A stretch of DNA of 64,000 nt from assembly GCF_032444005.1 (NCBI RefSeq), contig NC_091282.1, forward strand, positions 752,494,001 through 752,558,000, in the 5' to 3' direction. The stretch is from Ranitomeya imitator. Lineage: Eukaryota. Below are positions 815-41,908 of the stretch, piece after piece. The stretch's first letter is position 1, and each line of letters begins with the position of its first letter. Under the pieces are notes generated by a model. It made no database searches. It was not told the DNA's origin and saw only the letters and a program-made list of their open reading frames with translations. Position numbers and translations under genes: made by a program.

Positions 815-1627
815 TGTTATGAAAGGTAATGCAGTACCACAATGGACATAGAGGTCAGAGCACATACAGTGACCTGACAATAACCCAAAAACATAGAACG
901 AGCTCTGAGACGTGGGAACTCTGCTGACCGCAATCCCTACTCCTCTCCAACCACACTAGAGGCAGCCGTGGATTGCACCTAACGCTTCCTATGCAACTCG
1001 GCACAGCCTGAGAAACTAGCTAGCCTGAAGATAGAAAATAAGCCTACCTTGCCTCAGAGAAATACCCCAAAGGAAAAGGCAGCCCCCACATATAATGACT
1101 GTGAGTTAAGATGAAAAGACAAACGCAGAGATGAAATAGATTTAGCAAAGTGAGGCCCGACTTTCTGAACAGAGCGAGGATAGGAAAGGTAACTTTGCGG
1201 TCAACACAAAACCCTACAAAAAACCACGCAAAGGGGGCAAAAAGACCCTCCATACCGAACTAACGGCACGGAGGTACACCCTCTGCGTCCCAGAGCTTCC
1301 AGCAAGCAATAAAAAACAAATAGACAAGCTGGACAGAAAAAAACAGCAAACAAAATAGCAAAGCGGAACTTAGCTATGCAGAGCAGTAGGCCACAGGAAC
1401 GATCCAGGAGGAAACAGATCCAATACTAGAACATTGACTGGAGGCCAGGATCAAAGCACTAGGTGGAGTTAAATAGAGCAGCACCTAACGACTTCACCAC
1501 ATCACCTGAGGAAGGAAACTCAGAAGCCGCAGTACCACTTTCCTCCACCAACGGAAGCTCACAGAGAGAATCAGCCGAAGTACCACTTGTGACCACAGGA
1601 GGGAGCTCTGCCACAGAATTCACAACA
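815..1627 (-). repeat. 3' LTR of the Gypsy element
   Basis: Direct repeat of 5809-6619, TG...CA ends, adjacent to the PPT. Confidence 0.95.
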
Positions 1628-4600
1628 GTACCCCCCCCTTGAGGAGGGGTCACCGAACCCTCACCAGAGCCCCCAGGACGACCAGGATGAGCCATATGAA
1701 AGGCACGAACAAGATCGGGAGCATGGACATCAGAGGCAAAGACCCAGGAATTATCTTCCTGAGCATAACCCTTCCACTTAACCAGATACTGGAGATTCCG
1801 TCTTGAAACACGAGAATCCAAAATCTTCTCCACAATATACTCCAACTCCCCCTCCACCAAAATCGGGGCAGGAGGATCAACAGATGGAACCATAGGTGCC
1901 ACGTATCTCCGCAACAATGACCTATGGAATACGTTATGTATGGAAAAAGAATCTGGAAGGGTCAGACGAAAAGACACAGGATTAAGAACCTCAGAAATCC
2001 TATACGGACCAATGAAACGAGGTTTAAACTTAGGAGAGGAAACCTTCATAGGAATATGACGAGAAGATAACCAAACCAAATCCCCAACACGAAGTCGGGG
2101 ACCCACACAGCGTCTGCGATTAGCGAAACGTTGAGCCTTCTCCTGGGACAAGGTCAAATTGTCCACTACATGAGTCCAAATCTGCTGCAACCTGTCCACC
2201 ACAGTATCCACACCAGGACAGTCCGAAGACTCAACCTGCCCTGAAGAGAAACGAGGATGGAACCCAGAGTTGCAGAAAAACGGCGAAACCAAGGTAGCCG
2301 AGCTGGCCCGATTATTAAGGGCGAACTCAGCCAAAGGCAAAAAGGACACCCAGGCATCCTGATCAGCAGAAACAAAGCATCTCAGATATGTTTCCAAGGT
2401 CTGATTGGTTCGTTCGGTCTGGCCATTAGTCTGAGGATGGAAAGCCGAGGAAAAAGACAAGTCAATGCCCATCCTACCACAAAAGGCTCGCCAAAACCTC
2501 GAAACAAACTGGGAACCTCTGTCAGAAATGATATTCTCTGGAATGCCATATAAACGAACCACATGCTGGAAGAACAATGGCACCAAATCAGAGGAGGAAG
2601 GTAATTTAGACAAGGGTACCAAATGGACCATCTTAGAGAAGCGATCACAGACCTCCCAAATGACTGACATCTTTTGAGAGACGGGAAGATCTGAAATAAA
2701 ATCCATAGAGATATGTGTCCAAGGCCTCTTCGGGACCGGCAAGGGCAAAAGCAACCCACTGGCACGAGAACAGCAGGGCTTAGCCCGAGCACAAATCCCA
2801 CACGACTGCACAAAAGAACGCACATCCCGCGACAGAGATGGCCACCAAAAGGATCTAGCCACTAACTCTCTGGTACCAAAGATTCCAGGATGACCAGCCA
2901 ACACCGAACAATGAACCTCAGAGATAACTTTATTCGTCCACCTATCAGGGACAAACAGTTTCTCCGCTGGGCAACGATCAGGTTTATTAGCCTGAAATTT
3001 TTGCAGCACCCGCCGCAAATCAGGGGAGATGGCAGACACAATTACTCCCTCTATGAGGATACCCGCCGGCTCAGATAAACCCGGAGAGTCGGGCACAAAA
3101 CTCCTAGACAGAGCATCCGCCTTCACACCCTTAGAGCCCGGAAGGTACGAAATCACAAAGTCAAAACAGGCAAAAAACAGCGACCAACGAGCCTGTCTAG
3201 GATTCAACCGCTTGGCAGACTCGAGATAAGTCAAGTTCTTATGATCAGTCAAGACCACCACGCGATGCTTAGCTCCTTCAAGCCAATGACGCCACTCCTC
3301 GAATGCCCACATCATGGCCAGCAACTCTCGATTGCCCACATCATAATTTCGCTCAGCAGGCGAAAACTTCCTGGAAAAGAAGGCGCATGGTTTCATCACC
3401 GAGCAATCAGAACTTCTCTGCGACAAAACAGCCCCCGCTCCAATTTCAGAAGCATCAACCTCGACATGGAATGGAAGCGAAACATCTGGTTGACACAACA
3501 CAGGGGCAGAAGAGAAACGACGCTTCAACTCTTGAAAAGCTTCCACAGCAGCAGAAGACCAATTGACCACATCAGCACCCTTCTTGGTCAAATCGGTCAA
3601 TGGTTTAGCAATACTAGAAAAATTGCAGATGAAGCGACGATAAAAATTAGCAAAGCCCAGGAACTTTTGCAGACTCTTCAGAGATGTCGGCTGAGTCCAA
3701 TCATGGATGGCTTGGACCTTAACGGGGTCCATCTCGATAGTAGAAGGGGAAAAGATGAACCCCAAAAATGAAACCTTCTGAACACCAAAGAGACACTTTG
3801 ATCCCTTCACAAACAAAGAATTAGCACGCAGGACCTGAAACACCGTTCTGACCTGCTTCACATGAGACTCCCAATCATCCGAGAAGATCAAAATGTCATC
3901 CAAGTACACAATCAGGAATTTATCCAGGTACTCTCGGAAGATGTCATGCATAAAGGACTGAAACACTGATGGAGCATTGGCAAGTCCGAATGGCATTACT
4001 AGATACTCAAAATGGCCCTCGGGCGTATTAAATGCAGTTTTACATTCATCGCCTCGCTTAATACGCACAAGATTATACGCACCACGAAGATCTATCTTGG
4101 TGAACCAACTAGCCCCCTTAATCCGAGCAAACAAATCAGATAACAACGGCAAGGGGTACTGAAATTTAACCGTGATCTTATTTAGAAGGCGGTAATCTAT
4201 ACAAGGTCTCAGCGAACCATCCTTCTTGGCCACAAAAAAGAACCCTGCTCCTAATGGCGACGATGATGGACGAATATGCCCCTTCTCCAAGGACTCCTTC
4301 ACATAACTCCGCATAGCGGCGTGCTCAGGCACAGATAAATTAAACAGTCGACCTTTTGGGAATTTACTACCAGGAATCAAATCGATAGCACAATCACAAT
4401 CCCTATGCGGAGGTAGGGTATCGGACTTGGGCTCATCAAATACATCCCGGTAATCAGACAAGAACTCTGGAACCTCAGAAGGGGTGGATGACGAAATAGT
4501 CAGAAATGGGACATCACCATGTACCCCCTGACAACCCCAGCTGGACACAGACATGGATTTCCAATCTAATACTGGATTATGGACTTGTAGCCATGGCAAC

Positions 4601-5661
4601 CCCAACACGACCACATCATGCAGATTATGCAACACCAGAAAGCGAATAACCTCCTGATGTGCAAGAGCCATGCACATGGTCAGCTGGGTCCAGTACTGAG
4701 GCTTATTCTTGGCCAAAGGCGTAGCATCAATTCCTCTCAATGGAATAGGACACTGCAAGGGCTCCAAGAAAAACCCACAACGCCTAGCATACTCCAAGTC
4801 CATCAAATTCAGGGCAGCGCCTGAATCCACAAATGCCATGACAGAATACGATGACAAAGAGCAGATCAAGGTAACGGACAAAAGAAATTTTGACTGTACC
4901 GTACCAATGGTGGCAGACCTAGCGAACCGCTTAGTGCGCTTAGGACAATCAGAGATAGCATGAGTGGAATCACCACAGTAGAAACACAGCCCATTCAGAC
5001 GTCTGTGTTCTTGCCGTTCAACTCTGGTCAAAGTCCTATCGCACTGCATAGGCTCAGGTTTAAGCTCAGGTAATACCGCCAAATGGTGCACAGATTTACG
5101 CTCACGCAAGCGTCGACCGATCTGAATGGCCAAAGACATAGACTCATTCAGACCAGCAGGCATAGGAAATCCCACCATGACATCCTTAAGGGCTTCAGAG
5201 AGACCCTTTCTGAAAATAGATGCGAGCGCACCTTCATTCCATTGAGTGAGTACGGACCACTTTCTAAATTTCTGACAATATACCTCTATGTCATCCTGAC
5301 CCTGACACAGAGCCAGCAAATTTTTCTCTGCCTGATCCACTGAATTAGGTTCATCGTACAGCAATCCGAGCGCCAGGAAAAACGCATCGATATTACTTAA
5401 TGCAGGATCTCCTGACGCAAGAGAAAATGCCCAGTCCTGAGGGTCGCCACGTAAAAAAGAAATAATGATCCTAACTTGTTGAGCTGGGTCACCAGAGGAG
5501 CGAGGTTTCAAAGCCAGAAATAGTTTACAATTATTTTTGAAACTCAGAAATTTAGTTCTATCTCCAAAAAACAAATCAGGAATAGGAATTCTCGGTTCTA
5601 ACATAGAATTCTGAACCACAAAGTCTTGAATACTTTGTACTCTTGCCGTGAGCTGATCCAC
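1459..5661 (-). CDS. Gag-Pol polyprotein (gag, CCHC knuckle, protease, RT, RNase H, integrase, chromodomain) as a single ORF
   Basis: Motifs CFYCGDSTHAISDC, FVDSGA, YLDD, VEVDASE, HPG...CGIC, ISMDFISDL...ISDRGSQF...NGQTER and EYIVEKILDSRVSRRNLQYLVKWKGY. The track start at 5661 is GTG; the first in-frame ATG is about 5604. Confidence 0.95.
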   Translation of the reverse strand: MDQLTARVQSIQDFVVQNSMLEPRIPIPDLFFGDRTKFLSFKNNCKLFLALKPRSSGDPAQQVRIIISFLRGDPQDWAFSLASGDPALSNIDAFFLALGLLYDEPNSVDQAEKNLLALCQGQDDIEVYCQKFRKWSVLTQWNEGALASIFRKGLSEALKDVMVGFPMPAGLNESMSLAIQIGRRLRERKSVHHLAVLPELKPEPMQCDRTLTRVERQEHRRLNGLCFYCGDSTHAISDCPKRTKRFARSATIGTVQSKFLLSVTLICSLSSYSVMAFVDSGAALNLMDLEYARRCGFFLEPLQCPIPLRGIDATPLAKNKPQYWTQLTMCMALAHQEVIRFLVLHNLHDVVVLGLPWLQVHNPVLDWKSMSVSSWGCQGVHGDVPFLTISSSTPSEVPEFLSDYRDVFDEPKSDTLPPHRDCDCAIDLIPGSKFPKGRLFNLSVPEHAAMRSYVKESLEKGHIRPSSSPLGAGFFFVAKKDGSLRPCIDYRLLNKITVKFQYPLPLLSDLFARIKGASWFTKIDLRGAYNLVRIKRGDECKTAFNTPEGHFEYLVMPFGLANAPSVFQSFMHDIFREYLDKFLIVYLDDILIFSDDWESHVKQVRTVFQVLRANSLFVKGSKCLFGVQKVSFLGFIFSPSTIEMDPVKVQAIHDWTQPTSLKSLQKFLGFANFYRRFICNFSSIAKPLTDLTKKGADVVNWSSAAVEAFQELKRRFSSAPVLCQPDVSLPFHVEVDASEIGAGAVLSQRSSDCSVMKPCAFFSRKFSPAERNYDVGNRELLAMMWAFEEWRHWLEGAKHRVVVLTDHKNLTYLESAKRLNPRQARWSLFFACFDFVISYLPGSKGVKADALSRSFVPDSPGLSEPAGILIEGVIVSAISPDLRRVLQKFQANKPDRCPAEKLFVPDRWTNKVISEVHCSVLAGHPGIFGTRELVARSFWWPSLSRDVRSFVQSCGICARAKPCCSRASGLLLPLPVPKRPWTHISMDFISDLPVSQKMSVIWEVCDRFSKMVHLVPLSKLPSSSDLVPLFFQHVVRLYGIPENIISDRGSQFVSRFWRAFCGRMGIDLSFSSAFHPQTNGQTERTNQTLETYLRCFVSADQDAWVSFLPLAEFALNNRASSATLVSPFFCNSGFHPRFSSGQVESSDCPGVDTVVDRLQQIWTHVVDNLTLSQEKAQRFANRRRCVGPRLRVGDLVWLSSRHIPMKVSSPKFKPRFIGPYRISEVLNPVSFRLTLPDSFSIHNVFHRSLLRRYVAPMVPSVDPPAPILVEGELEYIVEKILDSRVSRRNLQYLVKWKGYAQEDNSWVFASDVHAPDLVRAFHMAHPGRPGGSGEGSVTPPQGGGTVVNSVAELPPVVTSGTSADSLCELPLVEESGTAASEFPSSGDVVKSLGAALFNST

Positions 5662-9822: not shown

Positions 9823-9845
9823 TAGTCGACAACCTCGACTGAACG

Positions 9846-12800
9846 GGCCACACCCTTATTACATCACCATTCAGAGCATGCTGTTGCTAGCTGCGCCCGC
9901 CTCCAGTGCTGGACTGGCCACACCCTTATTACACCATTCAGAGCATCCTGTTGCTAGTTGAGCCCGCCTCCAGTGCTGAACTGGCCACACACTTATTACA
10001 TCACCATTCAGAGCATGCTGTTGCTAGCGGAGCCCGCCTACAGTGCTGGACTGGCCACACCCTTATTACATCACCATTCAGAGCATGCTGTTGCAAGTTG
10101 AGCCCACCTACAGTGCTGGACTGGCTACACCCTTATTACATCACCATTCAGAGCATGCTGTTGCTAGCTGAGCCCGCCTACAGTGCTGGACTGGCCACAC
10201 CCTTATTACATCACCATTCAGAGCATGCTGTTGCTAGCTGAGCCCGCCTACAGTGCTGGACTGGCCACACCCTTATTATATCACCATTCAGAGCATGCTG
10301 TTGCTAGCTGAGCCCGCCTACAGTGCTGGACTGGCCACACCCTTATTACATCACCATTCAGAGCATACTGTTGCTAGCTGAGCCCGCCTACAGTGTGGAC
10401 TGGCCACACCCTTATTATATCACCATTGAGAGCATGCTGTTGCTAGCTGAACCCGCCTACAGTGCTGGACTGGCCACACCCTTATTACATCACCATTCAG
10501 AGCATGCTGTTGCTAGCTGAGCCCCCTACAGTGCTGGACTGGCCACACTCTTATTACATCACCATTCAGAGCATGCTGTTGCTAGTTGAGCCCTCCTACA
10601 GTGCTGGACTGGCCACACTCTTATTACATCACCATTCAGAGCATGCTGTTGCTAGCTGAGCCCGCCTACAGTGCTGGACTGGCCACACCCTTATTACATC
10701 ACCATTCAGAGCATGCTGTTGCTAGCTGAGCCCGCCTACAGTGCTGGACTGGCCACACCCTTATTATATCACCATTCAGAGCATGCTGTTGCTAGCTGAG
10801 CCCGCCTACAGTGCTGGACTGGCCACACCCTCAGTACATCACCATTTAGAGCATGCTGTTGCTAGTTGAGCCCCCTACAGTGCTGGACTGGCCGCACCCT
10901 TATTATATCACCATTCAGAGCATGCTGTTGCTAGCTAAGCCTGCCTACAGTGCTGGACTGGCCACACCCTTATTACACCATTCAGAGCATCCTGTTGCTA
11001 GTTGAGCCCGCCTCCAGTGCTGAACTGGCCACACCCTTATTACATCACCATTCAGAGCATGCTGTTGCTAGCGGAGCCCGCCTACAGTGCTGGACTGGCC
11101 ACACCCTTATTACATCACCATTCAGAGCTTGCTGTTGCTAGCTGAGCCCGCCTACAGTGCTGGACTGGCCACACCCTTATTACATCACTATTCAGAGCAT
11201 GCTGTTGCTAGTTATGCACCGCCTACAGTGCTGGACTGGCCACACCCTTATTATATCACCATTCAGAGCATGCTGTTGCTAGCTGAGCCCTCTACAGTGC
11301 TGGACTGGCCACACTCTTATTACATCACCATTCAGAGCATGCTGTTGCTAGTTGAGCCCTCCTACAGTGCCGGACTGGCCACACCCTTATTACATCACCA
11401 TTCAGAGCATGCTATTGCTAGTTGAGCCCGCCTACATTTCTGGACTGGCCACACCCTTATTACATCACCATTCAGAGCATATTGTTGCTAGCTGAGCCCG
11501 CCTACAGTGCTGGACTGACCACACCCTTATTACATCACCATTCAGAGCATTCTGTTGCTAGCTGAGCCCGCCTACAGTGCTGGACTGACCACACCCTTAT
11601 TACATCACCATTCAGAGCATGCTGTTGCTAGCTGAGCCCCCTAGAGTGCTGGACTGGCCACACTCTTATTACATCATTATTCAGAGCATGCTGTTGCTAG
11701 CTGAGCCCCCTACAGTGTTGGACTGGCCACACCCTTATTACATCACCATTCAGAGCATGCTGTTGCTAGCTGAGTTCCCTACAGTGCTGGACTGGCCACA
11801 CCCTTATTACATCACCATTCAGAGCATACTGTTGCTAGCTGAGACCCCTACAGTGCTGGACTGGCCACACCCTTATTACATCACCATTCAGAGCATACTG
11901 TTGCTAGCTGAGCCCCCTACAGTGCTGGACTGGCCACATTCTTATTACATCACCATTCAGAGCATGCTGTTGCTAGCTGAGCCCCCTACAGTGCTGGACT
12001 GGCCACATTCTTATTACATCACCATTCAGAGCATGCTGTTGCTAGCTGAGCCCGCCTACAGTGTTGGACTGGCCACACCCTTATTACATTACCATTCAGA
12101 GCATCCTGTTGCTAGCTGAGTTCCCTACAGTGCTGGACTGGCCACACCCTTATTACATCACCATTCAGAGCATACTGTTGCTAGCTGAGCCCCCTACAGT
12201 GCTGGACTGGCCACATTCTTATTACATCACCATTCAGAGCATGCTGTTGCTAGCTGAGCCCCCTACAGTGCTGGACTGGCCACACCCTTATTACATCACC
12301 ATTCAGAGCATACTGTTGCTAGCTGAGCCCCCTACAGTGCTGGACTGGCCACATTCTTATTACATCACCATTCAGAGCATGCTGTTGCTAGCTGAGCCCG
12401 CCTACAGTGTTGGACTGGCCACACCCTTATTACATTACCATTCAGAGCATCCTGTTGCTAGCTGAGTTCCCTACAGTGCTGGACTGGCCACACCCTTATT
12501 ACATCACCATTCAGAGCATGCTGTTGCTAGCTGAGTTCCCTACAGTGCTGGACTGGCCACACCCTTATTACATCACCATTCAGAGCATACTGTTGCTAGC
12601 TGAGACCCCTACAGTGCTGGACTGGCCACACCCTTATTACATCACCATTCAGAGCATACTGTTGCTAGCTGAGCCCCCTACAGTGCTGGACTGGCCACAC
12701 CCTTATTACATCACCATTCAGAGCATACTGTTGCTAGCTGAGCCCCCTACAGTGCTGGACTGGCCACATTCTTATTACATCACCATTCAGAGCATGCTGT

Positions 12801-14609
12801 TGCTAGCCGAGCCCCCTACAGTGCTGGACTGGCCACATTCTTATTACATCACCATTCAGAGCATGCTGTTGCTAGCTGAGCCCGCCTACAGTGTTGGACT
12901 GGCCACACCCTTATTACATTACCATTCAGAGCATCCTGTTGCTAGCTGAGCCCCCTACAGTGCTGGACTGGCCACACCCTTATTACATCACCATTCATAG
13001 CATACTGTTGCTAGCTGAGCCCCCTACAGTGTTGGACTGGCCACACCCTTATTACATTACCATTCAGAGCATCCTGTTGCTAGTTGAGCCCCCTACAGTG
13101 CTGGACTGGCCACACCCTTATTACATCACCATTCAGAGCATACTGTTGCTAGCTGAGTTCCCTACAGTGCTGGACTGGCCACACCCTTATTACATCACCA
13201 TTCAGAGCATGCTGTTGCTAGCTGAGTTCCCTACAGTGCTGGACTGGCCACACCCTTATTACATCACCATTCAGAGCATACTGTTGCTAGCTGAGACCCC
13301 TACAGTGCTGGACTGGCCACACCCTTATTACATCACCATTCAGAGCATACTGTTGCTAGCTGAGCCCCCTACAGTGCTGGACTGGCCACACCCTTATTAC
13401 ATCACCATTCAGAGCATACTGTTGCTAGCTGAGCCCCCTACAGTGCTGGACTGGCCACATTCTTATTACATCACCATTCAGAGCATGCTGTTGCTAGCCG
13501 AGCCCCCTACAGTGCTGGACTGGCCACATTCTTATTACATCACCATTCAGAGCATGCTGTTGCTAGCTGAGCCCGCCTACAGTGTTGGACTGGCCACACC
13601 CTTATTACATTACCATTCAGAGCATCCTGTTGCTAGTTGAGCCCCCTACAGTGCTGGACTGGCCACACCCTTATTACATCACCATTCATAGCATACTGTT
13701 GCTAGCTGAGCCCCCTACAGTGTTGGACTGGCCACACCCTTATTACATTACCATTCAGAGCATCCTGTTGCTAGTTGAGCCCCCTACAGTGCTGGACTGG
13801 CCACACCCTTATTACATCACCATTCAGAGCATACTGTTGCTAGCTGAGTTCCCTACAGTGCTGGACTGGCCACACCCTTATTACATCACCATTCAGAGCA
13901 TACTGTTGCTAGCTGAGACCCCTACAGTGCTGGACTGGCCACACCCTTATTACATCACCATTCAGAGCATACTGTTGCTAGCTGAGCCCCCTACAGTGCT
14001 GGACTGGCCACATTCTTATTACATCACCATTCAGAGCATGCTGTTGCTAGCTGAGCCCCCTACAGTGCTGGACTGGCCACATTCTTATTACATCACCATT
14101 CAGAGCATGCTGTTGCTAGCTGAGCCCCCTACAGTGCTGGACTGGCCACACCCTTATTACATCACCATTCATAGCATACTGTTGCCAGCTGAGCCCCCTA
14201 CAGTGCTGGACTGGCCACACCCTTATTACATCACCATTCATAGCATGCTGTTGCTAGCTGAGCCCCCTACAGTGCTGGACTGGCCACACCCTTATTACAT
14301 TACCATTCAGAGCATACTGTTGCTAGCTGAGCCCCCTACAGTGCTGGACTGGCCACACCCTTATTACATCACCATTCATAGCATACTGTTGCTAGCTGAG
14401 CCCCCTACAGTGCTGGACTGGCCACACCCTTATTACATCACCATTCATAGCATACTGTTGCTAGCTGAGCCCCCTACAGTGCTGGACTGGCCACACCCTT
14501 ATTACATCACCATTCATAGCATACTGTTGCTAGCTGAGCCCCCTACAGTGCTGGACTGGCCACATTCTTATTACATCACCATTCATAGCATACTGTTGCT
14601 AGCTGAGCC
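9846..14609. repeat. 69/70-bp tandem minisatellite, roughly 68-69 copies
   Basis: Unit CCACACCCTTATTACATCACCATTCAGAGCATGCTGTTGCTAGCTGAGCCC(G)CCTACAGTGCTGGACTGG. Confidence 0.97.
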
Positions 14610-16598: not shown

Positions 16599-19500
16599 TT
16601 AGCTCAGGGACCCATTGATATTAGTCAGCATGGCACACACAGCCCATAACTGATTGGCTATGCCAGCTAAAGCGTATGGCAAAACATTATCGAACAGGTG
16701 ATACTGGCGGACCCGCTCTATGTCTTGGTTAATGCATATTCTTAGAGCAATAGAATTAATGTCTTTGTCGAGTCCAGACGCTTCCTTATTAGCCTTCCCC
16801 ATGTGGGCTTCGCACATCGTCAGCTCCTCCAGGCCGTAACGTTCATCCTTAATAACAATCTCTTGACTTTTGCCAGAGTCTCTTATTTCCGCTCCAGTGT
16901 GATCTACAGGACCCTCGTCTCCCATGTTTTCCGTGGTGGTCACCACCTCCTCCACTAATTTCTCCTCTGTCACAACTTCCTCAACCACATCCATCTCTCC
17001 AGCAGACTGCTCAAGTTCCACAACTTCATCTTCTACTCCCGTTGAGGTCACCACCAAGGTCTCCTGCCCCTCTTCGTTGGTGGACGCAAGGATGAACATG
17101 GCGTTCTGTTCGGTTGGCGGCTGGTTTAACATGACTGTTGCATCTTGGCACTCCCTAGGGAGGGTGGCGGTCGTAATAATGGGAGGGATGACCACAGAGG
17201 CACCAACGGATTCCACCAAATCTTGGATGAGGAAATCCTTCTCAGTGACCACCCAATCTCCAGATTCCAGTAATTCCAAGATGCCAGACGACTTAATAAT
17301 CTCTCTCTTTGATGCACTCCCGGAATAGAGTGGGCTTATAAATATGACAGCTCCGTGAGGGGCTATGCCAAGCAAGCCTTTGTAAATGGCACGGTTATAA
17401 GATATTGGAGAACGTAAGCTTTCCGTGTTGCTTGTCTGCACCTTAACTTCTGCACAATGTAAAGTCACTCGGGCACGTGGGTATGAAGCCTTAAAACATT
17501 CTGGTACCTCCTGGCAACCAGTTTCCCGACTTCGCCAAAGGGGTATTTCACTAAGGACCAGATACAAATAGTGTGCCCACGTGATAACAATCCTGGCAAC
17601 TCTGGTCTGAGAGATCTTGAACCGAACAGCTAGATCTTGATCATGGAATCCCTGACGGACTTTGCATAAAAATAAGAAAAACTGGTCGATCTGCGGCATG
17701 GCCTCCGATTCTGCTGACATCTCCTTGTTGATGGTCATATTCCCTTCCTCTTGGCATTGCCTCCACTTTTCCAAGCTGCCCTCTGTGTCAGTCAGGGTTG
17801 AGAAAACTACTTTTAAAGTGGAATAATTCTTAAATCCAGTATAAAAGTGGATAAGGCTCGAGTCTGTGGAAAACCGATCCAGAAAGAAGAGATTCTTCTC
17901 CAGGGCAGCGTTGCGTTGCTGTAATCTGGCAATCTCCTCACGGGCTGCGTGCAGCATTTCCGTATCGGTCATGGGTGGTAAGTCGTAGCAGTGGTCCATT
18001 ATGGAAGCCGTCATCTCTAGCGGTTGGGAGGATTTATAGTTTTGTACTTGGGGTTGTGAAGGCAAAATGGGTTGAAGCATGTTTTTACTGCTCCTGGCGA
18101 CATGATAGAAACAAAGAAGAAAGACATCAGTTTCATCACAACGCTAACACTTTGCCATAACTACACGTGGAAATGGAGTCCATATGACACATGCACTTGG
18201 GTCTAACACCTTCCTAACATTGGACGTACTGATAAATCCACTGTTGGGTGCCCGAGCATAATGTGGGCACATTGGCTGCACCCAAACAATATCTGGAAGA
18301 TGCTGGCTATGCTACACAGCCAGCATCTGCCTCTAACAGCAGTGAGTGGAGCGAGTATACACCTTGTCGCGGTGGGACAGCTTTAAGCATTTTTTTTTAT
18401 TCATCAAAAACAGTGTTTACCAAGTACCCTATGTTAATTATTTAATGCAATTGCTTTTTTACTTTTTTATTTTCATTAGGGTATATGCACACATTGCTAT
18501 TTTTTTCATTTTGTGCATGATGTCAAGTCATATGCCGGCTCAGTTTTTTGTTTTTCTGTGATTCTTATTAGGGTAGAACTTATCTTGGGAATAATTCCCT
18601 AAAAGGATTTGTTGGCACACAGGTTGATAAATGGCCGAATAAGGGTTCACAAGAACGCTCCTGCCTGATCACTGGCCTGTATGAAAATGGTATGAATCCG
18701 CTGACAATCTTTTACGTGGCCTAAACATGCACGCGGCACATCTCGTGAGATTGGGGGATGATGTGCTAAAGATATGGGGGTCTATTAAGTATTTTAACAA
18801 TAAGGCTTCCGTCACACTAGCAGTATTTGGTCAGTATTTTACATCAGTATTTGTAAGCCAAAACCAGGAGTGGAACAATTAGAGGAAAAGTATAATAGAA
18901 ACATATGCACCACTTCTGCATTTATCACCCACTCCTGGTTTTGGCTTACAAATACTGATGTAAAATACTGACCAAATACTGCTAGTGTGACGGCAGCCTT
19001 ACTTGACCCCCGTCTGCAACAATGAGGCCTGTAAGCGGCTCAATGCACCCATGACTGGTAGGAACTTGACGGTGCAAATGGGTTTTAGCACGATTACTGG
19101 GATTACCCCGGTAGTGCCACATAGTTTTTGATGTGCGCTCTGGAATATGAGGGATAATAAATATTAATTTAACAAAATTTATATTCACATTTTCCAGTTA
19201 ATTAATAAGTCGAGTAAGAAGTGCACAGGCAGTCATACTGTTACCCAGCTTTAAGAGGGAAAGGCAAAGTTGGCTACAGTCTTCTCAGAAAGAAAACCCT
19301 TGTGCTTTATTAAAGGGGAAGTCCAGAATTTGAAAAAAATAAAAAAATGGCAGCTTTCTATCAGAAACAGCACCACCTCTGACCATGGACTGTGTCAGCA
19401 GCTGCACTCCATCCACTTCAACTGGGTTCAACTCCAATACCACACAACAACCCATGGACCCATGGTCGACGGGGTGACGCTGGTTTTTGAAAGAAAAACA

Positions 19501-21700: not shown

Positions 21701-23000
21701 GAGGTGCGGTAACTAGCGGCGATAGTCGGAGACTTGCGCTCTGCTTGTTTATGAACATGTATAGCTTTTGCTTTAATTAAGTAGTTGAAAAAAACTTTTT
21801 TTTTTCTGTTTACAACCGCTTGTGACGCCATTTTCCGAAGCCCACCACATTCATTCGTCGGAGTGGTGTCAGGGATTGGATTTTGTGTTCTGAGTTGTGT
21901 TTTTACTGTTGCCATCTTGCGGTACATACAATGTTTTTACCGCCTTTTATTGCAGCCGCCAAAAAGCCACAGTTCTGTCATTTTGATTTTCCTTTTCGGA
22001 TTAATTTATTTCATATTTTGATAGATCAGACTTCTAGGAAAGCAGCGATACCAAATGTTTTTTTTTTCATTTCTTAATTTTTTAATGGGGGTGGGGGGTA
22101 GAAGTGCGGTGATTTGAACTTTAACCCCTTTACCCCCAAGGGTGGTTTGCACGTTAATGACCGGGCCAATTTTTACAATTCTGACCACTGTCCCTTTATG
22201 AGGTTATAACTCCGAAACGCTTCAACGGATCCTGGTGATTCTGACATTGTTTTCTCGTGACATATTGTACTTCATGATAGTGGTAAAATTTTTTTGATAG
22301 TACCTGCGTTTATTTGTGAAAAAAACGGAAATTTGGCGAAAATTTTGAAAATTTCGCAATTTTCAAACTTTGAATTTTTATGCAATTAAATCACAGAGAT
22401 ATGTCACACAAAATACTTAATAAGTAACATTTCCCACATGTCTCCTTTACATCAGCATAATTTTGGAAACAATTTTTTTTTTTGTTAGGGAGTTATAAGG
22501 GTTAAAAGTTGACCAGCAATTTCTCATTTTTACAACACCATTTTTTTTTAGGGACCACGTCTCATTTGAAGTCATTTTGAGGGGTCTATATGATAGAAAA
22601 TGCCCAAGTGTGACACCATTCTAAAAACTGCACCCCTCAAGGTACTCAAAACCACATTCAAGAAGTTTATTAACCCTTCAGGTGTTTAATAGGAATTTTT
22701 GGAATGTTTAAATAAAAATGATACATACATGCTAGCCACCTTAGGGAGAGACCCAAGTTGGGCTAAATGTAGCGGGACGAAAGAGACCGAAAAGCCCTCT
22801 ACTTAAAGGAAATACATAGTGGATGCTTTCCTGAAACGGAAAGTACTTGCAAGCAGCATAATACAAAGAATAGCAGGTTTACCCAGAATCCTTTGCAGTA
22901 GGCGGAGCTATGCAAATCATCTCTTTCCACCCCTGTCTAATCCACAGCGCTTGGAATCGCCAAGCGTGCAATGCTGCGGATTAGTTTCTAAATTTACACA

Positions 23001-23075
23001 GCCAACCAATTCCTACCTGTGGACACGTGTTTCGGGCTTTAGGCCCTCATCAGCACAGGGCTGGAATTGGTTGGC
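23001..23075 (-). ncRNA. Minimal type I hammerhead ribozyme (left-arm copy)
   Basis: Reverse complement of the copy at 23641-23715, with an intact CUGAUGA / GAAA / GUC core. Confidence 0.9.
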
Positions 23076-23415
23076 TGTATGGAGTGGGGCTCGGTGAGCA
23101 AGCGATACATACATGCTAGCCACCTTAGGGAGAGACCCAAGTTGGGCTAAATGTAGCGGGACGAAAGAGACCGAAAAGCCCTCTACTTAAAGGAAATACA
23201 TAGTGGATGCTTTCCTGAAACGGAAAGTACTTGCAAGCAGCATAATACAAAGAATAGCAGGTTTACCCAGAATCCTTTGCAGTAGGCGGAGCTATGCAAA
23301 TCATCTCTTTCCACAGGTAGGAATTGGTTGGCTGTGTAAATTTAGAAACTAATCCGCAGCATTGCACGCTTGGCGATTCCAAGCGCTGTGGATTAGACAG
23401 GGGTGGAAAGAGATG

Positions 23416-23593
23416 ATTTGCATAGCTCCGCCTACTGCAAAGGATTCTGGGTAAACCTGCTATTCTTTGTATTATGCTGCTTGCAAGTACTTTCCGTTTC
23501 AGGAAAGCATCCACTATGTATTTCCTTTAAGTAGAGGGCTTTTCGGTCTCTTTCGTCCCGCTACATTTAGCCCAACTTGGGTCTCTCCCTAAG
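23416..23593 (+). promoter_or_regulatory. snRNA-type promoter inside the retrozyme monomer (octamer, GC box, SPH/Staf site, PSE)
   Basis: ATTTGCAT at 23416-23423. SPH-like TTACCCAGAATCCTTTGCA on the minus strand at 23436-23454. CTCTCCCTAAG at 23583-23593 resembles the Xenopus U1/U2 PSE core. Confidence 0.7.
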
Positions 23594-23640
23594 GTGGCTA
23601 GCATGTATGTATCGCTTGCTCACCGAGCCCCACTCCATAC

Positions 23641-23715
23641 AGCCAACCAATTCCAGCCCTGTGCTGATGAGGGCCTAAAGCCCGAAACACGTGTCCACAG
23701 GTAGGAATTGGTTGG
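23641..23715 (+). ncRNA. Minimal type I hammerhead ribozyme (right-arm copy)
   Basis: Stem I CCUGUG/CACAGG extended by CCAACCAAUUCC/GGAAUUGGUUGG. Core CUGAUGA at 23664-23670, stem II GGGC-CUAAA-GCCC, GAAA, palindromic stem III ACACGUGU, cleavage after GUC at 23695. Confidence 0.92.
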
Positions 23716-26700
23716 TTGTGTAAATTTAGAAACTAATCCGCAGCATTGCACGCTTGGCGATTCCAAGCGCTGTGGATTAGACAGGGGTGGAAAGAGATGA
23801 TTTGCATAGCTCCGCCTACTGCAAAGGATTCTGGGTAAACCTGCTATTCTTTGTATTATGCTGCTTGCAAGTACTTTCCGTTTCAGGAAAGCATCCACTA
23901 TAAATAAAAATGAACATTTAACTTTTTTACACAAAAAATTTACTTCAGCTCCAATTTGTTTTATTTTACCAAGGGTAACAGGAGAAATTGGACCCAAAAA
24001 AGTTGTTGTCCAATTTGTCCTGAGTACGCTGATACCCCATATGTGGCAGTAAACCACTGTTTGGGCGCATGGGAGAGCTCGGAAGGGAAGGAGCGCTATT
24101 TGACTTTTCAATGCAAAATTGACAGGAATTGAGATGGGACGCCATGTTGCGTTTGGAGAGCCACTGATGTGCCTAAACATTGAAACCCCCCACAAGTGAC
24201 ACCATTTTGGAAAGTAGACCCCCTAAGGAACTTATCTGGATGTGTGGTGAGCACTTTGACCCACCAAGTGCTTCACAGAAGTTTATAATGCAGAACCGTA
24301 AAAATAAAAAATCATATTTTTTCACAAAAATTATATTTTTGCCCCCAATTTTTTATTTTTCCAAGGGTAAGAGAAGAAATTGGACCTCAAAAGTTGTTGC
24401 CCAATTTGTCCCGAATACGCTGATACCCCATATGTGGCAGTAAACCACTGTTTGGGCGCATGGGAGAGCTCGGAAGGGAAGGAGCGCCGTTTGACTTTTC
24501 AATGCAAAATTGACAGGAATTGAGATGGGACGCCATGTTGCGTTTGGAGAGCCACTGATGTGCCTAAACATTGAAACCCCCCACAAGTGACACCATTTTG
24601 GAAAGTAGACCCCCTAAGGAACTTATCTGGATGTGTGGTGAGCACTTTGACCCACCAAGGGCTTCACAGAAGTTTATAATGCAGAGCCATGCAAATAAAA
24701 AATATTTTTTTTTCCACAAAAATTATATTTTAGCCCCCAGTTTTGTATTTTTCCAAGGTTAGCAGGAGAAATTGGACCCTAAATGTTGTTGTCCAATTTG
24801 TCCTGAGTACGCTGATACCTGATATGTGGGGGGGAACCACCGTTTGGGCGCATGGGAGGGCTCGGAAGGGAAGGAGCATCATTTGGAATGCAGACTTAGA
24901 TGGATTGGTCTGCAGGCGTCACATTGCGTTTGCAGAGCCCCTAATGTACCTAAACAGTAGAAACCCCCCACAAGTGACCCCATATTGGAAACTAGACCCC
25001 TCAATGAACTTATCTAGATGTGTTGTGAGAACTTTGAACCCCCAAGTGTTTCACTACAGTTTATAACGCAGAGCCGTGAAAATAAAAAATCTTTTTGTTT
25101 TCCCACAAAAATTATTTTTTAGCCCCCAGTTTTGTATTTTCCCAAGGGTAACAGGAGAAATTGGTCCACAAAAGTTGTTGTCCAATTTGTCCTGAGTACG
25201 CTGATACCCCATATGTTGGGGTAAACCCCTGTTTGGGCACACAGGAGAGCTCGGAAGGGAAGGAGCACTGTTTTACTTTTTCAACGCAGAATTGGCTGGA
25301 ATTGAGATCGGACGCCATGTCGTGTTTGGAGAGCCCCTGATGTGCCGAAACAGTGGAAACCCCCCAATTATAAATGAAACCCTAATCCAAACACACCCCT
25401 AACCCTAATCCCAACAGTAACCCTAACCACACCTCTAACCCTGACACACCCCTAACCCTAATCCCAACCCTATTCCCAACTGTAAATGTAATCTAAACCC
25501 TAACCCTAACTTTAGCCCCAACCCTAACTGTAGCCCCAACCCTAGCCCTAACCCTAGCCCTAGCCCTAACCCTAGCCCTAATGGGAAAATGGAAATAAAT
25601 ACATATTTTTTTATTTTTCCCTAACTAAGGGGGTGATGAAGGGGGATTTGATTTACTTTTATAGCGAGTTTTTTAGCGGATTTTTATGATTGGCAGCCGT
25701 CACACACTGAAAGACCCTTTTTATTGCAAAAAATATTTTTTGCAATACCACATTTTGAGAGCTATAATTTTTCCATATTTTGGTCCACAGAGTCATGTGA
25801 GGTCTTGTTTTTTGCGGGACGAGTTGACGTTTTTATTGAAAACATTTTTGGGCACGTGACATTTTTTGATCGCTTTTTATTCCGATTTTTGTGAGGAAGA
25901 ATGACCAAAAGCCAGCTATTCATGAATTTCTATTGGGGGAGGCGTTTATACCGTTCTGCGTTTGGTAAAATTGATAAATCAGTTTTATTCTTCGGATCAG
26001 TACTATTACAGCGATACCTCATTTATATCATTTTTTTTCTGGTTTGGCGCTTTTATACGATAAAAACTATTTTACAGAAAAAATAATTATTTTTGCATCG
26101 CTTTATTCTCAGGACTATAACTTTTTTATTTTTTTGCTGATGATGCTGTATGGCGGCTCTTTTTTTGCGGGACAATATGACGCTTTCAGCGGTACCATGG
26201 TTATTTATATCTGTCCTTTTGATCGCGTGTTATTCCACTTTTTGTTCGGCGGTATGATAATAAAGCGTTGTTTTTTGCCTCTTTTTTTTTTTTTTTCTTA
26301 CGGTGTTTACTGAAGGGGTTAACTAGTGGGACAGTTTTATAGGTCGGGTCGTTACGGACGCGGCGATACTAAATATGTGTACTTTTATTGGTTTTTTTTT
26401 TTATTTAGATGAAGAAATGTATTTATGGGAATAATATTTTTTTTTTTTTTCATTATTTTGGAATTTTTTTTTTTTTTTTTTTTTACACATTTGGAAAAAT
26501 TTTTTTTTACTTTTTTACTTTGTCCCAGGGGGGGACATCACAGATCAGTGATCTGACAGTTTGCACAGCACTCTGTCAGATCACTGATCTGACATGCAGC
26601 GCTGCAGCCTTCACAGTGCCTGCTCTGAGCAGGCTCTGTGAAGCCACCTCCCTCCCTGCAGGACCCGGATCCGCGGCCATCTTGGATCCGGGGCTGGAGG

Positions 26701-27456: not shown

Positions 27457-41908
<14,452 letters not shown>

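What the first reader, a model, noticed from the sequence alone, without database searches (positions are those of the whole stretch)
23641..23715. Canonical minimal hammerhead ribozyme in a 384-nt tandem monomer (retrozyme)
The sequence folds unambiguously into a type I hammerhead: long stem I, CUGAUGA, 4-bp stem II, GAAA, a palindromic stem III ACACGUGU (typical of minimal hammerheads that cleave as dimers) and a GUC site at 23695. A second intact copy lies on the minus strand at 23001-23075. The monomer has no coding capacity. This matches non-autonomous retrozymes and newt satellite 2, which are processed from multimers to monomer or circular RNAs.
Basis: partly seen in the sequence, partly recalled or inferred. 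Interest (0 to 1): 0.9.

Follow-up and report, generated by a model that had tools for sequence, protein, structure and literature searches.

The report
Frog hammerhead retrozyme, fold-back insertion
A genuine self-cleaving hammerhead RNA motif sits in a 384-base non-coding repeat of a known kind (an amphibian "retrozyme"), and this copy still shows how it was pasted in: two inverted 1.5-unit arms, a 13-base target duplication, and an inversion joint on the ribozyme's cut site.

Summary
A complete type I hammerhead lies on the + strand (core 23664-23688, C17 = 23695). An identical one lies on the - strand (core 23029-23053, C17 = 23022). A strict descriptor finds only these two in 64 kb and none in 200 shuffles. 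Rfam's best match is HH9 at 30.6 bits, below the gathering score.

The 384-nt unit is non-coding, 48% GC and strongly self-paired (z -6.5).

The locus is not a plain tandem array. It is a 1179-bp insertion (22722-23900) flanked by a 13-bp duplication, TAAATAAAAATGA. It has two inverted arms of about 1.5 units each. They join through a 5-nt microhomology that contains the ribozyme cleavage position.

This layout, partial tandem plus an adjacent inverted 5'-truncated copy plus an AT-rich duplicated target, is the published signature of Penelope-like elements. Their enzyme cuts and extends both DNA strands.

Amphibian non-LTR retrozymes and their proposed Penelope link are already published. This is a new member of a known kind, with a useful mechanistic fossil.

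Not tested here:
- self-cleavage
- circular RNA
- the Penelope partner

The scan has noted hammerhead elements many times elsewhere in this genome, including the same fold-back layout.

The parts
22709..22721 (.). Left copy of the 13-bp target-site duplication TAAATAAAAATGA
   Evidence: Read directly. Contigs in four runs join 22708 to 23901, skipping 1192 bases, with 11-13 letters fitting either side.
22722..23021 (-). Left arm, distal part: unit positions 300 to 1 in minus sense. It ends at the left duplication with a 2-nt overlap (GA).
   Evidence: blastn of the unit: positions 1-302 match 23021-22720 at 100%.
23022..23314 (-). Left arm, proximal part: unit positions 384 to 92 in minus sense, holding the minus-strand hammerhead core
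   Evidence: blastn of the unit: positions 92-384 match 23314-23022 at 100%.
22996..23080 (-). Minus-strand type I hammerhead. Core at 23029-23053, C17 at 23022, predicted cleavage between 23022 and 23021.
   Evidence: (HH9 30.1 bits, E 4.3e-05).
23310..23314 (.). Inversion joint: 5-nt microhomology TCCAC shared by both arms. The position equivalent to the hammerhead cleavage site (23311/23312) lies inside it.
   Evidence: Overlap of the two 100% matches. Sequence. The repeat finder D2/D3 and I1/I2.
23312..23695 (+). One complete 384-nt monomer, from cleavage site to cleavage site
   Evidence: Circular fold -143.9 kcal/mol, z -6.5, 67% paired. GC 48.4% and no ORF.
23637..23721 (+). Plus-strand type I hammerhead. 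Helix I is 6 bp, an internal loop, then 18 bp. Core at 23664-23688, C17 at 23695, predicted cleavage between 23695 and 23696.
   Evidence: (HH9 30.6 bits, E 3.1e-05).
23696..23900 (+). Partial second unit of the right arm, unit positions 1-205. It carries the only difference among the copies (T at 23716).
   Evidence: Every other copy in run X1 reads C at 23716.
23901..23913 (.). Right copy of the 13-bp target-site duplication
39300..39450 (-). In-window paralogue of the host repeat. It runs uninterrupted across the insertion point, so it serves as a paralogous empty site.
   Evidence: blastn and alignment A1.

Best explanation
This is one young copy of a high-copy, non-coding, 384-nt non-LTR retrozyme of a frog. 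Each unit carries a type I hammerhead whose helix III is too short to be stable alone.

Inferred life cycle:
1. Head-to-tail units are transcribed as multimers.
2. Hammerheads of neighbouring units pair through the palindrome ACACGUGU and cut after C17. [quoted passage not shown]
3. A host tRNA ligase can circularise these RNAs.
4. The RNA is then copied into DNA by a retroelement enzyme.

What this locus adds is the integration event. An AT-rich target inside another repeat was cut on both strands, 13 bp apart. Each 3'-OH primed reverse transcription on retrozyme RNA at an internal, predicted single-stranded site: unit position about 205 on one side and about 300 on the other. Each cDNA ran for about 1.5 unit lengths, so the template was multimeric or circular.

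The two cDNAs were joined head to head by a 3-5 nt microhomology. That joint falls where the plus-sense cDNA would run off an RNA whose 5' end was made by the hammerhead.

The most likely enzyme is the RT/GIY-YIG protein of an autonomous Penelope-like element.

Shown here: the motif, the unit, the insertion, the duplication, the inverted arms, the position of the joint and the abundance of the family. Inferred: cleavage, circularisation, the RNA template and the identity of the enzyme.
For: **Motif**
- Searches confirm the motif.
- Seven type I hammerheads that share this core and helix III pair in 98.8% of cells. Eight of 12 pairs show compensatory changes, and no slid control comes close.
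- A cofold of two copies gives -81.3 kcal/mol against 2 x -35.3, with the intermolecular ACACGUGU duplex.

**Unit**
- 384 nt, no ORF, 48% GC; z -6.5.

**Insertion**
- The 13-bp duplication and exact empty-site joints appear in four runs. An uninterrupted paralogue lies in the window.
- The arms are 100% identical apart from one private base.
- All three instances of unit position 65 in the insert (22957, 23376, 23760) carry A. At 23376, where run X1 was laid, about 94% of its depth reads G. This points to a single template.
- The inversion joint contains the cleavage position. The chance of that is about 6/384.

**Recurrent ends in other copies**
- The best-supported loose ends in X1 lie at unit positions 210, 212 and 214 (9, 8 and 5 contigs, unlike AT-rich flanks).
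- In X9 and X8 they lie at positions 300 and 301. These match this copy's two termini, 205 and 300.
- Both sites are unpaired in the predicted fold.

**Abundance**
- 1902 contigs of X1 lie on the unit, and closed 384-nt cycles appear in three other organisms.

**Literature**
- Amphibian retrozymes, dimer-dependent cleavage and RtcB circularisation: PMC7229834.
- Penelope-like insertions as partial tandems with an adjacent inverted 5'-truncated copy and variable duplications: PMC8557442.
- A Penelope-like enzyme cuts and extends both strands, prefers AT-rich DNA and starts reverse transcription internally: PMC11167929.
- Retrozymes as Penelope derivatives, present in all 7 amphibians sampled: bioRxiv 10.64898/2026.07.22.740005.
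Against: - Rfam's gathering score is not reached (30.6 against 52 for HH9; one search lists nothing).
- No run is on record as RNA, so expression and circles are unshown. The closed 384-nt cycles also occur in DNA runs, so they only show tandem DNA.
- The window holds no Penelope-like ORF, and I could not search the genome for a partner with a homologous terminal repeat.
- The target (TTT/AAAT...) also fits an L1-type endonuclease site, and twin priming by LINEs gives similar inversions.
- If all 5 nt of microhomology were used, the plus-sense cDNA ran 2 nt past the cleavage site, so the template would have been uncut there.
- The right arm contains an uncut site (23695/23696), so processing was at best partial.
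- The 30-40 bp 'tail' described for Penelope-like insertions is not evident.
- I did not check the inversion joint against independent reads.
- In a published test, 8 of 9 Xenopus retrozyme dimers did not cleave in vitro (bioRxiv 10.64898/2026.07.22.740005).
Confidence: 0.65

Rival explanations
1. Same retrozyme, but mobilised by a LINE (L1-like or other non-LTR) enzyme. The inversion arose by classical twin priming rather than by a Penelope-like enzyme.
For: - The duplication begins with AAAT and is preceded by TTT, which fits an L1-type nick site (my knowledge of L1 endonuclease preference).
- Its 13-bp length is in the L1 range.
- A 5' inversion joined by microhomology is the twin-priming signature.
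- PMC7229834 leaves both LINEs and Penelope-like elements open.
Against: - The right end has no poly(A) or LINE 3' tail.
- Other copies share defined internal 3' ends, which matches the internal initiation shown for a Penelope-like enzyme (PMC11167929).
- Type I hammerheads and the tandem-plus-inverted layout are Penelope traits (PMC8557442).
- Both arms exceed one unit.
Confidence: 0.2
2. Not an independent non-autonomous element. It is a heavily 5'-truncated insertion of an autonomous Penelope-like element, of which only the hammerhead-bearing terminal repeat was copied.
For: - Penelope-like insertions are mostly 5'-truncated and carry hammerheads in their terminal repeats (PMC8557442).
- Scan notes describe 'pLTR-only' fold-back insertions in this genome (s1-288123, unchecked).
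Against: - Unit follows unit directly at 23695/23696 and at 23021/23022 with no ORF between them.
- Closed 384-nt cycles dominate in three other organisms' runs. The template therefore had unit-to-unit junctions, which defines a retrozyme rather than a truncated coding element.
Confidence: 0.1
3. A DNA-level event with no RNA intermediate: a piece of hammerhead satellite (for example extrachromosomal circular DNA, or a fold-back replication product) was captured at a break.
For: - The family behaves as a satellite, with closed cycles in DNA runs.
- Inverted duplications can arise by fold-back repair.
Against: - The clean 13-bp duplication implies staggered cuts.
- Other copies end at the same unit positions.
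- The joint sits on the RNA cleavage site, which a DNA mechanism has no reason to favour.
Confidence: 0.07
4. The motif is a dead relic. The sequence matches a hammerhead, but the RNA is neither made nor cleaved in this species, and the repeat spreads only as satellite DNA.
For: - Eight of nine Xenopus retrozyme dimers failed to cleave in vitro (bioRxiv 10.64898/2026.07.22.740005).
- No RNA run is on record.
- The whole unit is as conserved as the ribozyme, so there is no sign of selective constraint on the motif itself.
Against: - All catalytic positions and all three helices are intact in both copies.
- The family is young and abundant.
- Runs that look like transcriptome assemblies hold the complete unit.
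- The joint lies at the cleavage site.
Confidence: 0.1

Closest known systems
Non-LTR retrozymes of amphibians (axolotl Rtz_330/353; Xenopus families) - PMC7229834; bioRxiv 10.64898/2026.07.22.740005
   Same: - Type I hammerhead in every unit
- Unit of a few hundred nt in head-to-tail repeats
- No ORF, GC below 50%, highly self-paired RNA
- Weak helix III closed by a palindromic tetraloop, implying dimer-dependent cleavage
- Very high copy number
- Target duplication longer than 4 bp
   Different: - A 384-nt unit in a frog whose chromosomes are larger than those of Xenopus (my inference: a scan note places another hit 282 Mb upstream on the same piece)
- No sequence comparison with published consensus sequences was possible.
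- This copy is a fold-back of two 1.5-mers. The retrozyme papers I read do not describe that layout: neither 'inverted' nor 'TSD' is applied to non-LTR retrozymes in the 2026 preprint.
Newt satellite 2 hammerhead repeat
   Same: - About 330-nt transcribed repeat
- Type I hammerhead with very short helix III that is active as a dimer
- Monomeric and multimeric RNAs (as summarised in PMC7229834)
   Different: - Salamander rather than frog
- Homology of the unit outside the ribozyme was not tested.
- Each unit here has an ATTTGCAT octamer that recalls the snRNA-type promoter I remember for satellite 2. The motif is not enriched beyond chance in the window.
Penelope-like elements: terminal-repeat hammerheads and insertion anatomy (PMC8557442, PMC11167929)
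   Same: - Partial tandem plus an adjacent inverted 5'-truncated copy
- Variable-length duplication and AT-rich target
- Priming on both DNA strands
- Internal start of reverse transcription
- Type I hammerhead
   Different: - No RT/GIY-YIG ORF here
- Published Penelope hammerheads are mostly 'minimal' variants, whereas this one has an extended helix I with an internal loop.
- No 30-40 bp tail seen
Rfam Hammerhead_HH9 (RF02275), the intronic hammerhead of amniotes
   Same: Best Rfam match over the whole model (1-77), including the helix I internal loop and loop II
   Different: - 30.6 bits against a gathering score of 52
- HH9 is a single-copy intronic motif with a stable helix III, not a repeat unit.
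L1 twin priming
   Same: 5' inversion, microhomology at the joint, duplication of 10-20 bp, A-rich target
   Different: No poly(A), a non-coding multimeric or circular template, and recurrent internal 3' ends

Membership tests
Hammerhead ribozyme, type I | Conserved core: C3 U4 G5 A6 N7 G8 A9, G12 A13 A14, A15.1-U16.1, G10.1-C11.1, H17 not G | tested here: met
   All are present in both copies. The descriptor gives 2 hits in the window and 0 in 200 shuffles.
Hammerhead ribozyme, type I | Three helices around the core, with helix I open-ended | tested here: met
   Helix I is 6+18 bp and helix II is 4 bp with a 5-nt loop. Helix III is 2 bp plus ACGU, or 8 bp between two copies. Stems I and II covary across 7 hammerheads that share the core and helix III. 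These sequences were picked by a pattern that fixed the core and helix III but not stems I and II.
Hammerhead ribozyme, type I | Reaches the curated Rfam gathering score of a hammerhead family | tested here: not met
   Nothing appears at gathering score. The best match is HH9 at 30.6 and 30.1 bits against 52. The short helix III costs score. Metagenome hammerheads with the same helix III do pass RF00163.
Hammerhead ribozyme, type I | Site-specific self-cleavage after position 17 | not testable with these tools
   The only indirect hint is that the inversion joint 23310-23314 contains the cleavage position.
Non-LTR retrozyme | Head-to-tail repeats of about 150-450 nt, each with a type I hammerhead | tested here: met
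   The period is 384, with unit-unit junctions at 23695/23696 and 23021/23022. Closed 384-nt cycles appear in X7, X8 and X9. This locus itself holds only about 1.5 units per arm.
Non-LTR retrozyme | No protein-coding capacity; no LTRs | tested here: met
   The longest ATG ORF in the tandemised unit is 33 aa. There are no flanking long direct repeats. PBS and PPT were not searched for.
Non-LTR retrozyme | GC below 50% and a highly self-paired RNA | tested here: met
   GC is 48.4%. The circular MFE is -143.9 kcal/mol, z -6.5, with 67% paired.
Non-LTR retrozyme | Expressed as linear and circular monomer RNA | tested here: inconclusive
   Runs guessed to be RNA hold the full unit, including a 414-nt contig (384+30). 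No run is on record as RNA, and contigs cannot show ends or circles.
Penelope-like-element-mobilised insertion | Partial tandem with an adjacent inverted 5'-truncated copy | tested here: met
   The right arm covers unit positions 1-384 and then 1-205. The left arm is inverted and covers 92-384 and then 1-300.
Penelope-like-element-mobilised insertion | Target-site duplication of variable length at an AT-rich target | tested here: met
   The 13-bp TAAATAAAAATGA lies on both sides, and empty-site joints exist.
Penelope-like-element-mobilised insertion | An autonomous RT/GIY-YIG partner whose terminal repeat is related to the unit | not testable with these tools
   None lies in the window: the large ORFs are Ty3/Gypsy, Harbinger and Tc1. 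The genome cannot be searched. Unchecked scan notes report Penelope-like elements elsewhere in it.
Penelope-like-element-mobilised insertion | 30-40 bp 'tail' extension at one end | tested here: inconclusive
   No extra non-unit, non-target sequence lies at either boundary. The two arms do end at different unit positions (205 and 300), both of which recur in other copies.

The most novel reading that the evidence does not exclude
This locus, and the others like it in this genome, would be a genomic fossil of dual-strand target-primed reverse transcription of a hammerhead-cleaved retrozyme RNA by a Penelope-like enzyme.

Two defined internal start sites lie in single-stranded parts of the RNA, at unit positions about 205-214 and about 300. 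The head-to-head joint falls where a cDNA runs off the 5' end created by the ribozyme.

If true, this would be the first direct evidence that the ribozyme-cut RNA is the transposition template. It would also show that retrozymes use the Penelope integration pathway, which the papers I read still state only as a hypothesis.
Probability: 0.4. Interest if true: 0.6.

Novelty: new member of a known kind. Interest (0 to 1): 0.4.

Why it matters
Hammerhead retrozymes are abundant in amphibians, but how they move is still a hypothesis. The papers I read argue for a Penelope link from co-occurrence and from similarity of terminal repeats. They do not argue it from integration scars.

A young copy with both boundaries, a clean duplication, inverted arms longer than one unit and a joint on the ribozyme cut site gives concrete, countable predictions for a genome-wide survey and for an in vitro integration assay. 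As a ribozyme or a repeat class, though, it is ordinary for an amphibian genome.

Tried and rejected
- **Rfam at gathering score:** nothing in the window. A whole-window search at E 0.05 also lost the two hammerheads. They appear only in the 1.7-kb search.
- **miRNA-family hits at 23284-23435**: these are just the fold-back joint of the two arms, so I rejected them.
- **Exact core search:** no match in metagenome or viral contigs.
- **Looser pattern:** it gave six unrelated environmental hammerheads (L001-L006) with the same helix III. None has an ORF over 160 aa, so they say nothing about a Penelope partner.
- **Earlier scan findings by place and by sequence:** blank.
- **Expression:** no run is on record as RNA, and all runs are contigs, so ends, strand and circles cannot be read. 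I do not count the closed 384-nt cycles as circular RNA, because DNA runs show them too.
- **Strand-change joints in other copies:** none were listed, so I could not test family-wide whether the joint falls at the cleavage site.
- **Octamer ATTTGCAT in each unit:** checked as a promoter lead, but not enriched (8 found, 5.2 expected).
- **Supplementary files of the 2026 preprint:** they hold no matching sequence.
- **Chance match:** rejected.
- **Coding element:** rejected.

Full report
**1. The observation**

- A long 5' strand of helix I, ending in CCUGUG
- CUGAUGA
- Helix II, GGGC-CUAAA-GCCC
- GAAA
- The palindrome ACACGUGU
- C17 at 23695
- CACAGG, which closes helix I

The 25-nt core occurs twice in the window, at 23664-23688 (+) and 23029-23053 (-), with none expected by chance.

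I wrote a strict descriptor requiring the core, G10.1-C11.1, a 4-6 bp helix II, A15.1-U16.1, H17 and a 6-bp helix I. It finds only these two sites on both strands of 64 kb and none in 200 dinucleotide shuffles. The 76-nt segment folds at -35.3 kcal/mol, z -4.98.

Rfam reports nothing at gathering score. In a 1.7-kb search the best family is Hammerhead_HH9, matched over the full model at 30.6 and 30.1 bits (E 3e-05 and 4e-05) against a gathering score of 52.

Six environmental hammerheads share the same core and the same helix III. Four of them pass the Rfam type I model. Aligned with the window's motif, 98.8% of cells pair and 8 of 12 pairs show compensatory changes. Controls with the 3' partner slid by 1-3 columns drop to 14-46% paired. 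That set was chosen by core and helix III only, so the covariation in helices I and II is independent support.

'Minimal' therefore applies to helix III only.

**2. The unit**

The repeat period is 384. Counting from the predicted cleavage site, the monomer is 23312-23695.
- **GC content:** 48.4%.
- **Coding capacity:** every frame of the tandemised unit has stops, and the longest ATG ORF is 33 aa.
- **Fold:** as a circle it folds at -143.9 kcal/mol. Shuffles give -106.4 +/- 5.8, so z is -6.5, with two thirds of bases paired.
- **Dimer:** two hammerhead segments cofold at -81.3 kcal/mol against 2 x -35.3, through an intermolecular 8-bp ACACGUGU duplex.

The dimer result matches the dimer-dependent design described for amphibian retrozymes and newt satellite 2 (PMC7229834).

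**3. What the locus really is**

It is not an array. It is a 1179-bp block (22722-23900) flanked on both sides by TAAATAAAAATGA, at 22709-22721 and 23901-23913.

Contigs in four public runs join 22708 to 23901 exactly, with 11-13 letters fitting either side. That is the same host repeat with one copy of the 13-mer and no insert. A diverged paralogue of the host repeat inside the window (39300-39450, minus strand) also runs through the site uninterrupted. So this is an insertion with a target-site duplication.

The block has two arms:

| Arm | Sense | Unit positions |
|---|---|---|
| Right | plus | 1-384, then 1-205 |
| Left | minus | 92-384, then 1-300 |

The arms overlap in a 5-nt microhomology, TCCAC, at 23310-23314. 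The position equivalent to the hammerhead cleavage site (23311/23312) lies inside those 5 nt. A random joint would do so about 6 times in 384.

The arms are identical except for T at 23716, where every other copy in run X1 reads C. All three instances of unit position 65 in the insert (22957, 23376, 23760) carry A. At 23376, where run X1 was laid, about 94% of its depth reads G. This indicates that one template was copied several times.

**4. The family**

In X1, a DNA run that may be the source, 1902 contigs lie on the unit and two thirds are at least 99% alike. In three other coded organisms the unit assembles as a closed 384-nt cycle: 414-nt contigs, or 'goes back 384' joints. Those runs appear to be DNA, so the cycles show tandem DNA, not circular RNA.

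The best-supported places where X1 contigs leave the unit into unlike, AT-rich sequence are unit positions 210, 212 and 214 (9, 8 and 5 contigs). In X9 and X8 the unit is left at positions 300 and 301. These are the two termini of the copy in this window (205 and 300). Both lie in stretches predicted to be unpaired.

The scan's index holds 222 notes with the word hammerhead for this genome. Some describe the same fold-back-plus-duplication layout, and others describe full-length Penelope-like elements inserted head to head. These notes are unchecked and I use them only as leads.

**5. Mechanism**

The published picture of retrozymes is as follows (PMC7229834). Multimers are transcribed and hammerheads cut them. 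In amphibians the hammerheads act as dimers. A tRNA ligase circularises the monomers, and an autonomous element's reverse transcriptase copies the RNA into tandem cDNA.

Penelope-like elements are the favoured partner (PMC7229834; bioRxiv 10.64898/2026.07.22.740005). Their insertions are typically partial tandems with an adjacent inverted 5'-truncated copy and variable duplications (PMC8557442). The purified enzyme of one such element cuts and extends both DNA strands, prefers AT-rich DNA and starts reverse transcription at internal sites of the RNA (PMC11167929).

The locus fits this point by point:
- An AT-rich target cut 13 bp apart
- Each 3'-OH extended on retrozyme RNA, with only 1-2 nt of overlap with the target
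- Two cDNAs of about 1.5 units, so the template was multimeric or circular
- A microhomology joint between the cDNAs

The plus-sense cDNA ends where an RNA cut by the hammerhead would end. That is the only trace of in vivo cleavage I can offer, and it is indirect. If all 5 nt of microhomology were used, the cDNA ran 2 nt beyond the site. The right arm also contains an uncut site.

**6. Rivals**

- **LINE twin priming.** It explains the inversion and the A-rich target. It does not explain the missing A-tail or the recurrent internal ends.
- **A 5'-truncated autonomous Penelope-like element.** The direct unit-to-unit junctions argue against it.
- **A DNA-level capture of satellite DNA.** The clean duplication and the position of the joint argue against it.
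- **A dead motif.** This cannot be excluded without an experiment. In a published test only one of nine Xenopus dimers cleaved in vitro (bioRxiv 10.64898/2026.07.22.740005).

**7. Novelty**

The following are all published:
- Type I hammerheads in amphibian repeats
- Non-LTR retrozymes
- Their presence in every amphibian sampled
- The Penelope hypothesis

This is a further family in a further frog. The added value is the integration scar. The retrozyme papers I read do not describe inverted arms or analyse boundaries for non-LTR retrozymes.

I rate interest at 0.4.

**8. Limits**

- I could not search the genome or see raw reads.
- I could not confirm the joint with independent reads.
- I could not establish that any run is RNA.
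- I could not compare the unit with published consensus sequences.

Noticed in passing
window 22100-25581 and 35866-39955: The retrozyme sits inside a composite repeat that occurs twice in the window, in inverted orientation at 76-87% identity. Each copy has a ~600-bp head, 3.7 to 6.6 tandem units of ~381-391 bp, and then a degenerate telomere-like tract (CCCTAA-like at 25378-25581, TTAGGG-like at 35866-36757). The ~390-bp unit has enormous summed depth in all four runs laid (thousands to 400,000).
   Followed up: partly
window 23416-23423, 23800-23807 (+); 22910-22917, 23294-23301 (-): Each retrozyme unit carries the octamer ATTTGCAT. From memory, newt satellite 2 uses an snRNA-type promoter. 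The motif is not enriched in the window as a whole (8 found, 5.2 expected).
   Followed up: partly
L001-L006 (metagenome contigs): Six unrelated environmental contigs carry type I hammerheads with exactly the same helix III and cleavage context (GAAACACGUGUC-C) but different helices I and II. Four pass Rfam RF00163. The ACACGUGU palindrome is therefore a widespread design and is not special to this frog.
   Followed up: partly
window 1459-5661 (-): An uninterrupted 1400-aa ORF carries gag, RT, RNase H, integrase, an SH3-like domain and a chromodomain. This is an apparently intact Ty3/Gypsy chromovirus-type polyprotein.
   Followed up: partly
window 16599-18080 (-); 28982-30927: The first is a Harbinger/PIF-type DDE transposase ORF (493 aa). 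The second is a Tc1/mariner-type element with perfect 202-nt terminal inverted repeats (28982-29183 and 30726-30927) and a transposase HTH ORF at 29250-29867.
   Followed up: partly
window 31205-32305; 32871-34928: Further fold-back structures: 364-nt arms at 96% with a 373-nt spacer, and nested 476-nt and 249-nt arms at 98-99% around a 410-aa ORF with no Pfam match (33055-34287, minus strand). No hammerhead was found in them.
   Followed up: no
window 9839-14609; 59415-60755; 27835-28983: Three tandem arrays: a 69-bp satellite (68.9 copies, 94% matches), a 39-bp G-rich minisatellite (34.7 copies), and an 81-86-bp array next to the Tc1-like element.
   Followed up: no
window 23376, 23760, 22957; 23716: All three instances of unit position 65 in the insert carry A. 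At 23376, where X1 was laid, about 94% of its depth reads G. T at 23716 is private to this copy and turns a G-C pair of distal helix I into G-U.
   Followed up: yes
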